Below are positions 30,452-62,888 of a stretch of DNA of 64,000 nt, one piece after another. Within the stretch, counting starts at the first letter, position 1, and every line of letters begins with the position of its first letter. Under the pieces are notes generated by a model. That model ran no database searches and was not told where the DNA came from. It saw nothing but the letters and a program-made list of their open reading frames with translations. The DNA lies in the IMG/VR virus record IMGVR_UViG_3300043464_001630, positions 172,392 to 236,391 of that record. One strand, 5' to 3'. The translations under genes were made by a program, and so were the position numbers.

Positions 30452-30492
30452 ACCGCTATCTCAGTAACATGAGATAGCGGTGTTTCTTTTTA
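30452..30492 (+). terminator. Intrinsic terminator
   Basis: CACCGCTATCTCA/TGAGATAGCGGTG followed by a T-run. Confidence 0.85.
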
Positions 30493-30930
30493 TAATTTGC
30501 CTTTTAGTGTTTGATATTCCATTTGTGAAGCAGTACCATCTAGTACTCTTCTAGCCGCTTTCATTTCCCCGAATTTGTATATACCTAAAATTGCAATGAT
30601 GTGTAATAGCCAAACAGATATTCTAAAAAATGTTTGTAGCTTTTCATTTCTCAATGATATGTTATAATCTTTCAAGATTGTTATAACCACATCTTTTACC
30701 AGATCTATACTTTCGTTTTTTAGTCTTTTTAATAAAAGAAAAATTTCATCTTTCAATGAATGAACTTTTTTGGTATTAATTGGCCGACCTTGGTTGTCTT
30801 GTGTGAGAAGAATTTTGATTTCTTCCCATTTTTGTAGAATCTCTTTTTTCTTGTTTTTTACTTCATCGATAAGTCCTTCTTCTAAGTAATAAAATTCTTG
30901 AAAACTCATTACGGCATTTTCTTTTTTCAT
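30490..30930 (-). CDS. Putative internal-head or membrane protein
   Basis: TAAATA box; N-terminal SFQEFYYLEE; one hydrophobic segment. Confidence 0.55.
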   Translation of the reverse strand: MKKENAVMSFQEFYYLEEGLIDEVKNKKKEILQKWEEIKILLTQDNQGRPINTKKVHSLKDEIFLLLKRLKNESIDLVKDVVITILKDYNISLRNEKLQTFFRISVWLLHIIAILGIYKFGEMKAARRVLDGTASQMEYQTLKGKL

Positions 30931-30972
30931 AAAATTATTTATCAAAAATGACCACGAAAGATAAATCTATTT

Positions 30973-31287
30973 ATGATAGTAATTTTCAAAAAAATCATTG
31001 ATATGTTTATGAATTTATTATCAGAAAAACCTAAATCTAAATCATTAGAAAATATCGAATTAGAAATAACATGGAGTGACATAGCATCTGGTACTTCCAA
31101 TTCAAAAAATGGTTCAGTATTGGCATATTCCATGAGAAGAAATGGTATGTTTGGTTATGCCACAGAAAGTAATATAGTTTTAGAAAACGGAGATGTTTAT
31201 TATCCAGTAGACTTATCAAGTCACTGGGAGGCTTATATCAATTCACCAAAAATAAAGCCAAAAACCCTACTATATTTTTTGGAATAA
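30973..31287 (+). CDS. Hypothetical protein
   Basis: ORF track. Confidence 0.5.
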   Translation: MIVIFKKIIDMFMNLLSEKPKSKSLENIELEITWSDIASGTSNSKNGSVLAYSMRRNGMFGYATESNIVLENGDVYYPVDLSSHWEAYINSPKIKPKTLLYFLE

Positions 31288-31312
31288 TGTGCTAAATTCC
31301 ATAAGTTAGTTT

Positions 31313-31570
31313 ATGGAACAGGAGAAAAAATATATTCATATCTCTATTGAAAAGTACGACGCTTTATTAGACGATTGGATAGAGGCTACCGGAACGTATG
31401 CCGATCAATTTAATCTCCACAAAGTGATGAAAAAGTTTGACGAATCGTGTGGGATAGTACATGCTGAGACCGAATTCGATGATGTGGATTTTGATGATTC
31501 ATACACATTCGAAGTAATAGACGGAAAGAAGTTTTTCGTCTCAGCATTAAAATACGATCTTATTAAGTGA
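31313..31570 (+). CDS. Small acidic phage protein with a C-terminal FEVID.K.F...LKY motif
   Basis: Motif shared with 47882-48115 and 61757-61996. Confidence 0.6.
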   Translation: MEQEKKYIHISIEKYDALLDDWIEATGTYADQFNLHKVMKKFDESCGIVHAETEFDDVDFDDSYTFEVIDGKKFFVSALKYDLIK

Positions 31571-31571
31571 A

Positions 31572-31970
31572 ATGTTTGAAAAATATCTAGAAATTACAAG
31601 GGCACTCATGAGCGAAGGGTTCTCTACACGAACGTTTCATACTACGTTCATTGTTAAAAAGAATAGAATTCAAAAAATTGGTATTAATGCGAACAAAACT
31701 CATCCTGCCAATCTGAAGTATGATTATTATTCCAAAAACGGAATAGATCTCAGAAGCATGGTTGGCGTACACTCTGAACTTTCTGCTATTTTGAAATACG
31801 GTAAAGAAGATTGTTCTGATTGTACTTTTGTAAATGTAAGAATTGATAGAAAAGGAAAGACGACAATTTCCAAGCCTTGTAGAGGATGTCAAGATTTGTT
31901 GATGCAAGTTGGATTTAAAAGATTGTATTTTTCGAATGATATGGGAGAATTTGAACAGTGGAAAATTTAA
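31572..31970 (+). CDS. Second Zn-dependent cytidine/nucleotide deaminase-fold protein
   Basis: HSE.SAI and SKPCRGC motifs. Confidence 0.75.
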   Translation: MFEKYLEITRALMSEGFSTRTFHTTFIVKKNRIQKIGINANKTHPANLKYDYYSKNGIDLRSMVGVHSELSAILKYGKEDCSDCTFVNVRIDRKGKTTISKPCRGCQDLLMQVGFKRLYFSNDMGEFEQWKI

Positions 31971-31972
31971 AT

Positions 31973-60316: not shown

Positions 60317-60342
60317 AATTTGATTTTTTTTATTCACTTTAA

Positions 60343-61100
60343 ATGAAAAAAGTTAAAATCACAAAACTAAGTGCAGCAGAAAATCCCAAGTATCCTACAC
60401 CTGATTTCGATGGTTATGAACTAGGAAAAGAAAACGGTAATGTTTCGCTTCCTGCTGAATATATTGTAGAAGGAAACATGGAAAAAGATCCCGTAGTAGG
60501 ATCTAGTGTTTTTGTGGAAAGAACTTCTAGAAATGGTGTAAAATCCTATGGATGTTTTTATACATCTCCTGTGACTGAAATTACTGAAAATGGATTTAAA
60601 ACACAAAATTCAATATATAAGCTAGAAGTTCTTGATTAAACAAAAAATTTAAATTATACTAAAAATATGGAAACAATTCTAGTAATCAGCAATCAAGTAG
60701 TACGGGATAATGCAAAAGTTAATTTTCCTGATTTGAATTATCCAAATTCAGGAGACACTGTACTCAGGTATCTACACAAGATCGACTACGAAAATCTACG
60801 CCTTCAGCTAGATGGAGAAGATGGAATCTGGTTTGAACATCCTAATCTTCCAAAAGGTGTAGGATTCTTTACAACAATTAAGAAAAAGAAATGAATGAAT
60901 CTAAATTAGATCAGTTATTATTAGATATTTTATCCGATATAGATTTAGATATTTCTTGTTTGGAACTAGAAAGAATTGAACTTAAACTGAACTCTTTTAA
61001 AAATCTTATCCAAAAAGCATATATGACGGGACAGTGTCATGCTTTTGACGAAGTTTATGCTCTAATAGAGAAAGCTATAGAAAATAAAAAAGATAACTAA
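60343..61100 (+). other. Three small hypothetical genes (60343-60639, 60667-60894, 60891-61100)
   Basis: ORF track. Confidence 0.55.
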
Positions 61101-61109
61101 TCTCCATAC

Positions 61110-61757
61110 ATGGAAACTTTATATTATCAATCATTATTAAAAGAATGTTCTTTAGTAGAACCGAAGAACACTAATAATGATTGGAAATATATCTTTTCTG
61201 TATATGAAAAATGCTATCAACTACAAATCTTAGAAAAGTTCGAATTCTCTTCGGAAACTAAAAAAGATAAAGTTACTGAACATAATTACAAGATAGAAAC
61301 AAAATCTGGAAAAGTCTTCAGTGTTTTGATATCTTATTATAATTCAGATAATAGCTACGAAATAGCTAACTCAAGCGAAACACTAGCTAAACAAAAGAGA
61401 AATAATACATTAGCAAACGAATTTGAAATTCTTAAAAACAAATTAAAGAAAGACGATTCTAAAATTTGTATAATTAATTTCATTGACTCAGATGCTAGAA
61501 ACACTTTAACAAATGAAGTTAATTACGAATCATTTGAAGTATTCTCTTCTTTAAAAGATTCGTTAATGGATAGCTTACTGAACAAAAACATGATAGAAGA
61601 TCTATCAGCCATTTCATTCAGAATATCTAAAAATGAAGGAAAAAGAAGAGAATTGTATATTAAAATGTTTAATAGATATCTAGGAAAACTATTTCCAGTT
61701 TTCTTCGAGGATAATTTAACAAACGAAGATTACGAAATTCTTTATTTCTGTAAGTAA
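61110..61757 (+). CDS. Hypothetical protein (possible internal-head protein)
   Basis: METLYYQSLLKE N-terminus. Confidence 0.55.
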   Translation: METLYYQSLLKECSLVEPKNTNNDWKYIFSVYEKCYQLQILEKFEFSSETKKDKVTEHNYKIETKSGKVFSVLISYYNSDNSYEIANSSETLAKQKRNNTLANEFEILKNKLKKDDSKICIINFIDSDARNTLTNEVNYESFEVFSSLKDSLMDSLLNKNMIEDLSAISFRISKNEGKRRELYIKMFNRYLGKLFPVFFEDNLTNEDYEILYFCK

Positions 61758-61996
61758 TGAGTAACTACGACGTAAAATTCGTACATGACAAAGATCCAAT
61801 ATTCAATATGTGGCTGGTATCTGATGATCCCGATCCACATGATGATGAAGTCGATATGAATTACGATAATTATCTAATTTACAAGAATTTCGGAGTGAAG
61901 AGAATAATTACTCCTTTAGGCACGCAAAATTTTCGCTACTACGAAATAGTAGACGAAAAGCAGTACTTTCTAAGTAAAATAAAATACGGCTTTTAA
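61757..61996 (+). CDS. Small phage protein with a YEIVDEKQYFLSKIKYG motif
   Basis: Paralogous C-terminal motif. Confidence 0.6.
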   Translation: MSNYDVKFVHDKDPIFNMWLVSDDPDPHDDEVDMNYDNYLIYKNFGVKRIITPLGTQNFRYYEIVDEKQYFLSKIKYGF

Positions 61997-61998
61997 AC

Positions 61999-62038
61999 AA
62001 ACCTTTACTTCTTCGGAGGTACGGGTTTTTCTTTTTTT
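61999..62038 (+). terminator. Intrinsic terminator with a UUCG loop
   Basis: AAACCTTTACTTC-TTCG-GAGGTACGGGTTT followed by a T-run. Confidence 0.75.
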
Positions 62039-62114
62039 GGTTTCTTCTTTTCTTTGCGATGAGAATTGTTACCTTTTGCCATACTATTATTTATCTTTTT
62101 CGTTAAATAATTTC

Positions 62115-62888
62115 ATGAATTTTGATAAGCTAGTTAAGCGTTTAACCGAAGCACCAGTAGGTGATATTGGTTTACACGGTGATTGGGAAAATGAAAAACT
62201 ACACCGTTATGATCGTCCTTCTATGCGAGCATTGAAAAAAGAAGGATATCTAGAAAAAGTAAAATCAAAGTTCGCAAAAGATATCGCAGTAAATTTTAAC
62301 TTATTTTTCGTTAAATCTGCACAAGCTGGCAAACATAGAGAAGTAGGAATTGTTTCTCCTGATAGATTACGTTCTATGATTTCAGATGTAAATTTAGATC
62401 CTATATTAAATTCTTCTAATGAGAATAATATTACGATTGTGTTCACAAATAACGTAGGCGATCAGAAAGTTCCGTTAACTCCTTGGATTATTGCACACAG
62501 AACTAGTCATGCTCTTTATCGTGGATCAATGAACGATAAAGAAATAAAAAGAGAATATACTTTTTTTATGCAAGAATACAAAAATACGTTAAAACATTGT
62601 TACGGTATTTTAATAAATGACTACGGAAGTGGTGTGGATAAAGATAATAGTCAGAAATTAAAGAGATTCTTTAGTACTGTAGGTACATTCAAATCGGCTA
62701 GAGATAAAAAAGTTATACGTCCATTTGAGTTTATCCATGAATGTTTCGCGCAATATCTAATGGAAGGTGGAATTACGTTTAACGAAGGAGAAGAAAGAAG
62801 AATGTGTTCATACGAATTACAAACTAACTTCGAAGCTTTATTCAGTCATGTGTTGTATAAATCTGAGGGCAAAATTTTTGTGATGTAG
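62115..62888 (+). CDS. Putative internal-head protein with a zincin-like HRxxH..E motif
   Basis: TAAATA at 62104-62109 places the start at 62115 (MNFDKLVKRLTE/AP); WIIAHRTSH..HECFAQY. Confidence 0.6.
   Translation: MNFDKLVKRLTEAPVGDIGLHGDWENEKLHRYDRPSMRALKKEGYLEKVKSKFAKDIAVNFNLFFVKSAQAGKHREVGIVSPDRLRSMISDVNLDPILNSSNENNITIVFTNNVGDQKVPLTPWIIAHRTSHALYRGSMNDKEIKREYTFFMQEYKNTLKHCYGILINDYGSGVDKDNSQKLKRFFSTVGTFKSARDKKVIRPFEFIHECFAQYLMEGGITFNEGEERRMCSYELQTNFEALFSHVLYKSEGKIFVM

What the first reader, a model, noticed from the sequence alone, without database searches (positions are those of the whole stretch)
30490..62888. Dispersed set of putative injected head proteins with T4-like capsid-targeting leaders
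Seen: isolated genes among the early genes, most with their own TAAATA box, begin with similar leaders ending in a hydrophobic-x-E site. These are SFQEFYYLEE (30930), IFEAY..FILE (44982), KFNQLMEEILTE (47009), KFKDLVNHILKE (55162, ParB-N), LFDKIV..FVE (58464), LAELY..LLNE (59664), ISEIY..IYLE (59873, RyR), LYYQSLLKE (61110) and NFDKLVKRLTE (62115). Known: T4 internal proteins carry an N-terminal targeting peptide removed after Glu by gp21. Inference: these are packaged and ejected effectors, and good anti-defence or host-takeover candidates.
Basis: partly seen in the sequence, partly recalled or inferred. Interest (0 to 1): 0.65.

Follow-up and report, generated by a model that had tools for sequence, protein, structure and literature searches.

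The report
Portable head-loading leaders on phage proteins
An uncultured lake phage distantly related to T4 puts short, interchangeable N-terminal tags ending in a protease-type Glu site, each behind its own late promoter, on about 27 unrelated proteins; this looks like T4's system for loading proteins into the head for injection, on a larger scale, but packaging and cleavage are not shown.

Summary
The window is the last 64 kb of a 236-kb uncultured T4-like phage from lake water. It encodes a gp21-type prohead protease, a gp23 capsid protein and a gp55-like late sigma factor.

About 27 genes genome-wide start with a shared leader:
- Type A: MND..LIWEAY, 11 core members plus 7 divergent ones.
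- Type B: M.KFD.LV..IL.E, 6 core members plus 1.
- A T4-like pair: SF.EFY.

Nearly all sit directly behind a TAAATA box placed 5 nt before the ATG. The bodies are unrelated. Conservation is at the amino-acid level, with synonymous third-base changes.

Verdict on the nine:
- 47009, 55162 and 62115 are strong.
- 44982, 59664, 59873 and 30930 are good.
- 58464 is doubtful.
- 61110 is rejected.

Relatives give the main support. The same ParB-N-like body carries type A, type B, T4-like or no leader, always joined at h-x-E. The Glu before the body of the 62115 family is invariant in 30 homologues. One RyR orthologue lacks both leader and box.

Best reading: head-targeting propeptides removed by the prohead protease. 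Packaging, cleavage, ejection and anti-defence roles remain untested.

The parts
62115..62888 (+). Type B leader gene, 257 aa. TAAATA box at 62104-62109 (gap 5). Leader 62115-62150 (12 aa), ending L-T-E|A-P.
   Evidence: HMM B E 1.8e-6. In 30 homologues Glu12 is one of 12 invariant columns, while the leader before it varies in length and sequence. A distant homologue lies between the protease and capsid genes of another T4-like contig. AF2 model has pLDDT 88.6, with the leader a separate low-confidence helix. No G003 homologue.
55162..55563 (+). Type B leader gene, 133 aa, ParB-N-like body with a DGHHR motif. Box at 55151-55156 (gap 5). Leader 55162-55200, ending L-K-E|N.
   Evidence: HMM B E 7e-7. 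Among 80 homologues with the same body, 32 carry type B leaders, at least 18 carry type A-like leaders, a few carry T4-like ones and 9 carry none. The junction in nearly all leader-bearing members is h-x-E| (a few have Asp) before the conserved HGDNW. A second ParB-N-like body in the same genome (G000 40668) carries type A.
46641..47009 (-). Type B leader gene, 122 aa, basic all-helical body. Box at 47015-47020 (gap 5). Leader 46968-47009, ending L-T-E|S.
   Evidence: HMM B E 4e-6. 26 homologues all have B-like leaders with Phe4 invariant. The G001 homologue carries an A-like leader instead. Body pI 9.7. No PDB fold match.
44982..46616 (+). Divergent type A leader gene, 544 aa, with a Gly-rich hydrophobic segment. 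Box at 44970-44975 (gap 6). Leader 44982-45047, containing I-F-E|A-Y and ending I-L-E|Q.
   Evidence: HMM A E 0.17. Best pair score 35 within the leader cluster. Against the G003 orthologue the first 18 residues are 100% identical and the body 67%.
59107..59664 (-). Type A-like leader gene, 185 aa, with a C-terminal hydrophobic segment. Box at 59670-59675 (gap 5). Leader 59593-59664, ending L-N-E|G.
   Evidence: 14 links to type A leaders in the unbiased clustering, best score 34. HMM A is weak (E 5.1). No G003 homologue. The membrane segment makes head loading less certain.
59873..60316 (+). Type A-like leader gene, 147 aa, RyR domain. Box at 59858-59863 (gap 9). Leader 59873-59926, ending Y-L-E|N.
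   Evidence: Pfam RyR 32.3 bits, over the cut-off. The first six leader residues (MSNDIK) are identical to, and the rest resembles, the type A leader of the gp21-adjacent gene in relative L024. The G003 orthologue (61% identity in the body) has neither leader nor box.
30490..30930 (-). T4-like ('type C') leader gene, 146 aa, with one hydrophobic segment. Box at 30936-30941 (gap 5). Leader about 30877-30930, containing S-F-Q-E-F-Y and ending L-E-E|G.
   Evidence: Pairs only with G000 130095 (score 31). The SF.EFYYLEE core is kept in G003 while residues 2-8 vary. Resembles T4 IP leaders read. Support is moderate.
58464..59069 (+). Doubtful member, 201 aa. B-like N-terminus but no TAAATA box.
   Evidence: HMM B E 0.13. 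No box. G003 relatives (31-46% identity) do not share the N-terminus. Matches PHROG 1349, function unknown.
61110..61757 (+). Rejected member, 215 aa. No box and no leader similarity.
   Evidence: Absent from the HMM hit lists and from the clusters. No box in either G000 or G003. Its L-K-E is an ordinary chance h-x-E.

Best explanation
The leaders are head-targeting propeptides of the T4 capsid-targeting-sequence kind.

Proposed mechanism, with each step marked:
1. Each cargo gene carries its own T4-type late promoter, TAAATA placed 5 nt before the ATG. It would then be made together with the head proteins even when it sits among early genes. The promoter is shown as sequence only; the timing is inferred.
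2. The acidic, amphipathic leader (type A, type B or the T4-like form) docks the protein onto the scaffolding core while the prohead assembles. This is inferred from T4.
3. The gp21-type protease then cuts after the Glu of an L/I/V-x-E site and frees a mostly basic mature protein that stays with the DNA. This is inferred. The site is shown as an invariant Glu at the leader-body junction.
4. The protein leaves with the DNA at infection. This is inferred.

The cargo set is accessory and varies between close relatives. It includes ParB-N-like, RyR, GNAT and PcfJ-like proteins and many of unknown fold. Early host take-over or anti-defence roles are plausible but untested.
For: - T4-type machinery is present: Peptidase_S77, Gp23, a portal and a gp55-like sigma.
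- The capsid protein has L-R-E|A aligned with T4's L-T-E|A. The protease has an invariant L-I-V-E near its N-terminus, like T4's L-I-E (PMC9026906).
- Leaders form tight families: 11 type A at E 1e-9 to 1e-10 and 6 type B at about 1e-6 to 1e-7. They sit on bodies that BLASTP does not relate.
- Codon positions 1 and 2 are fixed while position 3 varies.
- All 17 core members have the late box, against 27% of genes (0.27^17 is about 2e-10).
- Three type A genes flank the portal and protease genes.
- Leaders are swapped on one body: the ParB-N family carries A, B, T4-like or no leader with a constant h-x-E junction, and the 47009 body carries B in G000 and A-like in G001.
- Leader and box are gained or lost together (RyR gene).
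- Glu12 is invariant in the 62115 family.
- In 40 independent proteins selected only on residues 1-13, an h-x-E with Glu at 16-20 occurs in 27, against 3-8 in control windows.
- That leader sits on 33 unrelated bodies in at least 36 viral contigs.
- Mature parts are basic (median pI 8.6 against 6.0, p = 4e-5) and leaders acidic.
- Leader genes are less often shared with the close relative G003 (17 of 29 against 239 of 303, p = 0.02).
- T4 precedent: a 10-residue CTS, L/I-x-E cleavage, and IPs that share only the leader (PMC9026906, PMC12373910).
Against: - There is no virion proteome, N-terminal sequence or expression data for this phage or any relative. Only DNA runs were found.
- The leaders are not detectably homologous to T4's CTS.
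- About 27 cargo species, up to 716 aa, is many more than T4's handful.
- Three window candidates (30930, 44982, 59664) have hydrophobic segments that may send them to the membrane instead.
- Some type A leaders have no second h-x-E after I-W-E, so the cut position is uncertain.
- The complex prediction of protease with leader gave no answer, which is no evidence either way.
- The genome also has a ClpP-family protease, which could be what recognises N-terminal tags.
Confidence: 0.62

Rival explanations
1. The leader is a shared docking or sorting tag for some other late process, not head loading. Examples are recognition by the phage's ClpP-family protease or a chaperone, delivery to the membrane, or binding to a common phage or host hub protein. 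The conserved Glu would then be part of the binding helix rather than a cleavage site.
For: A ClpP-family gene with a late box is present, and another occurs in the L141 phage. Several leader proteins have hydrophobic segments. In the 47009 model the leader continues into a long helix.
Against: The Glu sits exactly at the leader-body boundary in two families whatever the leader type. The P3 residue is hydrophobic, as in T4 sites. Leader genes cluster around the portal and protease genes, and a 62115 homologue lies inside a head module. The basic bodies fit DNA-associated internal proteins.
Confidence: 0.17
2. The conserved start is a translation feature of leaderless late mRNAs: the first codons or the nascent peptide are tuned for initiation without a 5' leader. 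It would have no role in the finished protein.
For: The TAAATA-5 nt-ATG geometry suggests transcripts that start at or next to the ATG. No box gene has a Shine-Dalgarno-like motif.
Against: About 70 other box genes, including structural ones, lack the leader. Variation lies at synonymous third positions while Trp, Tyr, Ile and Glu are fixed. The leader extends 15-20 residues and ends at a conserved Glu junction.
Confidence: 0.07
3. The promoter-plus-leader unit is mainly a recombination patch that lets accessory genes be shuffled between phages. It would be conserved because of gene exchange rather than a function of the peptide.
For: Leader and box are gained and lost together. Leader genes are more variable between close relatives. 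One body carries different leader types.
Against: The DNA of the leaders is not homogenised: synonymous sites differ freely among the copies in one genome. Purifying selection acts on the peptide. Shuffling and a peptide function are not exclusive.
Confidence: 0.06
4. Chance similarity of N-termini in an AT-rich genome.
For: h-x-E alone is frequent. 61110 and perhaps 58464 are such cases.
Against: 88 high-scoring pairs against 3-4 in the controls, HMM E-values down to 1e-10, and recurrence in other phages.
Confidence: 0.01

Closest known systems
T4 internal proteins IPI, IPII and IPIII with their capsid-targeting sequence
   Same: A short N-terminal leader is shared by otherwise unrelated, non-essential, variable proteins. 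The leader ends in L/I-x-E|A. The phage has a gp21-type protease. The mature proteins are small and basic. T4's leaders were read here from NC_000866. Their properties are from PMC9026906 and PMC12373910.
   Different: The consensus differs and there is no detectable homology. At least two or three leader classes coexist in one phage. There are about 27 genes rather than three. They are dispersed with individual late boxes rather than lying in two loci. Type A is longer, with the aromatic pair at residues 8 and 11 rather than 4 and 7.
T4 prohead core and shell propeptides (gp22, gp67, gp68, gp24, gp23, gp21, Alt)
   Same: These are N-terminal stretches ending h-x-E that gp21 removes. T4's N-termini were read. 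This phage's gp22-like, gp21 and gp23 proteins show matching sites.
   Different: Those are essential assembly proteins. Most leader genes here are accessory.
Ejection and inner-body proteins of phiKZ-like giant phages (phiKZ, 201phi2-1, SPN3US)
   Same: Dozens of head-internal proteins are processed after Glu by a diverged gp21 homologue (PMC9026906, PMC10052503).
   Different: Their motif has a small residue at P3 (S/A-x-E), and no shared portable leader has been described. Here P3 is hydrophobic and the leader is a recognisable module.
Phage P1 Dar proteins and encapsulin cargo-loading peptides
   Same: Short terminal signals load cargo into an HK97-fold shell. P1 Dar proteins are anti-restriction cargo. 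This comparison rests on my own knowledge and on the titles and abstracts of PMC9024508 and PMC12810830.
   Different: P1 loading depends on DarA and Hdf rather than a cleaved leader. Encapsulin signals are usually C-terminal and are not cleaved.

Membership tests
T4-type CTS-bearing internal head proteins | A short N-terminal leader shared by otherwise unrelated proteins of one phage | tested here: met
   HMM families A and B. Bodies are unrelated by BLASTP. N-terminal similarity gives 88 pairs against 3-4 in the controls.
T4-type CTS-bearing internal head proteins | The leader ends in the prohead-protease motif L/I-x-E followed by the mature protein | tested here: met
   This is sequence-level evidence only. 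All six core type B leaders end in such a site. Glu12 is invariant in the 62115 family. The ParB-N family has a constant h-x-E junction. The site occurs in 27 of 40 proteins against 3-8 of 40 in control windows.
T4-type CTS-bearing internal head proteins | The phage encodes a gp21-family protease with T4-like specificity | tested here: met
   Peptidase_S77 at 98.9 bits. The capsid protein's L-R-E|A aligns with T4 gp23's L-T-E|A. Specificity itself is inferred.
T4-type CTS-bearing internal head proteins | Made late, together with the prohead | tested here: inconclusive
   A T4 late-promoter-like TAAATA sits 5 nt before the ATG on all 17 core members, and a gp55-like sigma is present. No RNA data exist.
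T4-type CTS-bearing internal head proteins | Leader homologous to the T-even CTS (MKTYQEFIAE) | tested here: not met
   HMMs A and B score T4 IPI-III at E above 40. Only 30930 and G000 130095 resemble it by eye. So these are not members of the T-even Ip leader family, although they appear to work like it.
T4-type CTS-bearing internal head proteins | Found in virions with the leader removed, and ejected with the DNA | not testable with these tools
   The phage is uncultured, and no cultured relative is in the phage collection.
Pfam ParB_N (PF02195), for gene 55162 | Score over Pfam's gathering cut-off | tested here: inconclusive
   18.8 bits against a cut-off of 26.3. PHROG ParB-like hits at 1e-6. 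Many homologues carry a precomputed PF02195. A DGHHR motif is present.
Pfam RyR (PF02026), for gene 59873 | Score over Pfam's gathering cut-off | tested here: met
   32.3 bits against a cut-off of 27.4.

The most novel reading that the evidence does not exclude
A widespread group of uncultured freshwater T4-like phages runs an expanded, modular protein-delivery system. Lineage-specific but interchangeable leader classes, each paired with a late promoter placed for leaderless transcripts, mark roughly 8% of the genes (about 27 proteins, most of unknown fold) for loading into the head and injection. If so, a simple leader model could read out the injected proteome of uncultured phages directly from sequence.
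Probability: 0.45. Interest if true: 0.75.

Novelty: new variant of a known kind. Interest (0 to 1): 0.62.

Why it matters
Injected proteins act before any phage gene is expressed. In T4 all three internal proteins turned out to be inhibitors of restriction systems (PMC12373910). If these leaders do mark head cargo, three things follow:
- A short sequence signature would pick out dozens of candidate first-strike proteins in phages that cannot be grown.
- It would show that the T4 loading principle is older, more flexible (several leader classes, swapped between bodies) and larger in scale than T-even phages suggest.
- It would offer new targeting tags for loading foreign proteins into phage heads.

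No paper in the held library contains the leader motifs.

Tried and rejected
- Near-identity DNA search of the window against cultured phages found nothing. The capsid protein is at most 32% identical to any cultured phage, so no virion proteome can be borrowed.
- tblastn of 62115 and of a distant homologue against cultured phages found nothing. 55162 hits only ParB-like genes of unrelated giant phages at about 30% identity.
- Pfam and PHROGs on about 35 leader proteins were mostly blank.
- Complex prediction of the gp21 homologue with the first 40 residues of a type A protein gave a score of 0.00 and a verdict of 'no answer'. This is not evidence for or against binding.
- Fold searches. The 62115 model has no Foldseek PDB match. 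VIA gives only Z about 4 to zincin-like metallopeptidases, too weak to name a fold. BFVD returns two uncharacterised phage proteins. The 47009 model matches only generic helical bundles.
- Protein Atlas look-ups of the 716-aa and 341-aa type A proteins gave nothing usable.
- The sequencing-run search found only lake-water DNA runs and no RNA, so transcript starts could not be checked and read laying was not used.
- The strict MND..LIWE.Y pattern occurs only in this phage, its near twin G003 and one other IMG/VR contig, so that version is lineage-specific.
- Leader HMMs do not recognise T4's own leaders.
- h-x-E on its own was rejected as a criterion, and 61110 was rejected as a member.

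
Full report
**Context.** The window is G000:C1:172392-236391, the last 64 kb of a 236,391-bp IMG/VR virus record with 33.7% G+C, rated complete.
- It encodes a Peptidase_S77 prohead protease (G000 72662-73333, minus strand; 98.9 bits).
- It encodes a Gp23-family capsid protein (69427-70983, minus strand).
- It encodes a T4-type portal.
- A weak match to T4's late sigma gp55 (E 2.5e-5) lies in a 500-aa ORF that also holds an intein-like insert.
- The capsid protein is at most 32% identical to any cultured phage, and the window has no near DNA match among cultured phages.
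- IMG/VR holds 339 contigs with a protease 63-99% identical.
- The DNA is found in lake-water metagenomes from several studies.

So this is a deep-branching, uncultured, freshwater T4-like phage.

**The observation.** All nine ORFs exist. Seven have TAAATA just before the ATG, five of them with a gap of exactly 5 nt. This spacing is a genome-wide rule:
- TAAATA followed by ATG after 5 nt occurs 72 times in G000, against 4-17 at the other spacings from 0 to 14 nt.
- The same peak is seen in three related complete genomes.

Genes with the box include the structural genes. With the gp55-like sigma present, I read the box as the T4-type late promoter.

**The leaders.** HMMs built from them give:
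- 11 core type A members (consensus MND..LIWEAY) at E 1e-9 to 1e-10, plus divergent ones (G000 77515, 3960, 67440, 73397; window 44982, 59664, 59873);
- six core type B members (M.KFD.LV..IL.E) at E 2e-7 to 6e-6, among them window genes 47009, 55162 and 62115.

An unbiased test agrees. N-terminal 18-mers of the 93 box-preceded genes give 88 pairs scoring 30 or more. Internal segments give 4 and N-termini of genes without a box give 3. Clustering puts 59664 (14 links) and 44982 into the type A group. It pairs 30930 with G000 130095 in a small T4-like group. 61110 has no box and no similarity, and I reject it. 58464 has a B-like start but no box, and I call it doubtful.

**What kind of conservation.**
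- After the first 22 residues are removed, the bodies show no BLASTP relation apart from three marginal hits. The leader is therefore a portable module, not the mark of a paralogue family.
- Among the 11 core type A genes, codon positions 1 and 2 of the conserved residues are invariant. Third positions vary freely (AAT/AAC, GAT/GAC, TTA/TTG/CTG, ATA/ATC/ATT, GAA/GAG, TAT/TAC). Selection is on the peptide, not on an RNA or DNA element.
- All 17 core members have the late box, against 27% of genes overall.

**Evidence from relatives.**
1. *The 55162 family.* Its 80 homologues share a ParB-N-like body that begins near HGDNW. 32 carry type B leaders, at least 18 carry type A-like leaders (for example MKSKDQLLLEEAYQLVCE), a few carry a T4-like leader (MRSFKEFLLTE), and 9 start at the body. 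In nearly all leader-bearing members the leader ends h-x-E directly before the body; a few have Asp there instead. Within G000 itself a second ParB-N-like body carries type A.
2. *The 62115 family.* In 30 homologues down to 27% identity, the leader varies in length and sequence. The Glu before A/M-P is nevertheless one of only 12 invariant columns. Some leaders look very like T4's (MRATEFITE|AP). A distant homologue lies between the protease and capsid genes of another T4-like contig, where neighbouring genes share their own leader (MK.xxIF).
3. *The 47009 body* has a type B leader here and an A-like one in G001.
4. *The RyR gene 59873* has leader and box here. Its G003 orthologue (61% identity) has neither.
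5. *The gene next to the protease* (G000 73397) has type A leaders ending x-x-E|A in relatives.
6. *A third phage contig* has five MKSKDQ.LLEEAY genes and three type B genes within 12 kb, mostly with the same box.
7. *That leader in IMG/VR.* It occurs on 41 unique proteins in 33 unrelated body clusters across at least 36 contigs. The two most complete of the five contigs checked have Peptidase_S77. The search pattern fixed only residues 1-13. Even so, residues 16-17 are hydrophobic, and an h-x-E with Glu at 16-20 occurs in 27 of 40, against 3-8 of 40 in control windows.

**Fit to the T4 model.** The literature gives the reference points:
- gp21 cuts after Glu in L/I-x-E.
- The first 10 residues of IPIII suffice for head loading.
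- Residues 4 and 7 govern targeting, and residues 8 and 10 govern processing (PMC9026906).
- T-even internal proteins share only the leader and are injected inhibitors of GmrSD restriction enzymes (PMC12373910).

T4's leaders, read from NC_000866, are MKTYQEFIAE|A and MKTFKEF...ITE|A. Here the capsid protein has L-R-E|A aligned with T4's L-T-E|A. The protease keeps an invariant L-I-V-E near its start, like T4's L-I-E.

The leaders are acidic (pI about 4.1) and the bodies basic (median pI 8.6 against 6.0 for other proteins, p = 4e-5). This matches what I recall of the T4 internal proteins. Leader genes are less often shared with the close relative G003 (17 of 29 against 239 of 303, p = 0.02). 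Where a gene is shared, the leader is usually at least as well conserved as the body. Three type A genes flank the portal and protease genes.

**Limits.**
- Nothing here shows packaging, cleavage or ejection.
- The leaders are not homologous to T4's by HMM, so they are not members of the T-even Ip family by sequence.
- About 27 cargo species is a large number.
- Three window candidates have hydrophobic segments.
- The cut site in type A is ambiguous: I-W-E|A at residue 9, a later h-x-E, or both. The two type A leaders with Asp in place of Glu9 (G000 38735 and 77515) both have a later L-x-E. This fits the T4 finding that Asp blocks processing but not targeting. It is only two cases.
- The complex prediction gave no answer.
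- A ClpP-family protease in the genome allows a rival reading.

**Functions.** Most bodies are unknown to Pfam and PHROGs.
- Named ones are RyR (59873), ParB-N-like (55162 and G000 40668), GNAT (G000 50541) and PcfJ-like (G000 83222).
- The 62115 family folds confidently (pLDDT 88.6). It has invariant T-W-H-H and R-E-E-A-Q columns but no clear known fold. The only resemblance is a weak one (Z about 4) to zincin-like peptidases.
- The 47009 protein is a small basic helical protein.
- The idea that the packaged ParB-N-like proteins interfere with GmrSD-type enzymes, whose N-terminal domain is ParB-N-like, is speculation.

**Verdict.**
Head-targeting propeptides are the best explanation (about 0.6). 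Ejection and anti-defence roles are open.
- It is a new variant of a known kind.

Noticed in passing
Genome-wide; in the window for example 62104-62117, 55151-55164 and 47007-47020: TAAATA followed by exactly 5 nt and then ATG occurs 72 times in G000, against 4-17 at the other spacings from 0 to 14 nt. The same peak appears in three related genomes. None of the 93 such genes has a GGAG/GAGG/AGGA motif upstream, and only 9% of other genes do. By my recollection of T4 late-promoter geometry, transcripts would start at or next to the ATG, giving leaderless late mRNAs. No paper on this turned up.
   Followed up: partly
L194:280-1782 (G000 103528-105030, +): The ORF with the gp55-like late sigma match is 500 aa and contains an intein-like insert. 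Pfam Intein_splicing scores below its cut-off, and T4 gp55 matches only a 54-residue stretch at 35% identity.
   Followed up: partly
L007:7351-9585 (G000 79351-81588, -): The portal protein (Portal_T4, E 7e-94) also carries an intein splicing domain.
   Followed up: no
L006:6452-7081 (G000 60452-61084, +): A ClpP-family protease gene with a late box sits in a phage that already has the S77 prohead protease. The unrelated T4-like contig L141 has one too. Its role is unknown.
   Followed up: no
L007:2898-3353 (G000 74898-75356, -) and L003:10985-12352: There is a TnsA-like endonuclease gene inside the head module, and a TnpB-type ORF (Cas12f1-like TNB domain) elsewhere. These look like mobile-element passengers.
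   Followed up: no
window 37060-37722 (-): A glycosyl hydrolase family 46 protein with a late box is a candidate endolysin. Its N-terminus is not a leader.
   Followed up: no
window 32519-36451 and 38148-39395: The genes around the candidates include two AAA ATPases, an RNA ligase with an OB-fold domain, and a DUF2201 metallopeptidase/VWA protein.
   Followed up: no
window 62115-62888 and alignment A1: The 62115 family has a confident predicted fold and invariant T122, W124, H128, H132, R196, E205, E209, A212 and Q213, but no clear known fold. It may be an undescribed enzyme family of T4-like phages.
   Followed up: partly
L141:5534-10882: In a distant T4-like contig, several unrelated genes between the protease and capsid genes begin MK(L/V)xxI(F/L). 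This is a further lineage-specific leader variant.
   Followed up: partly
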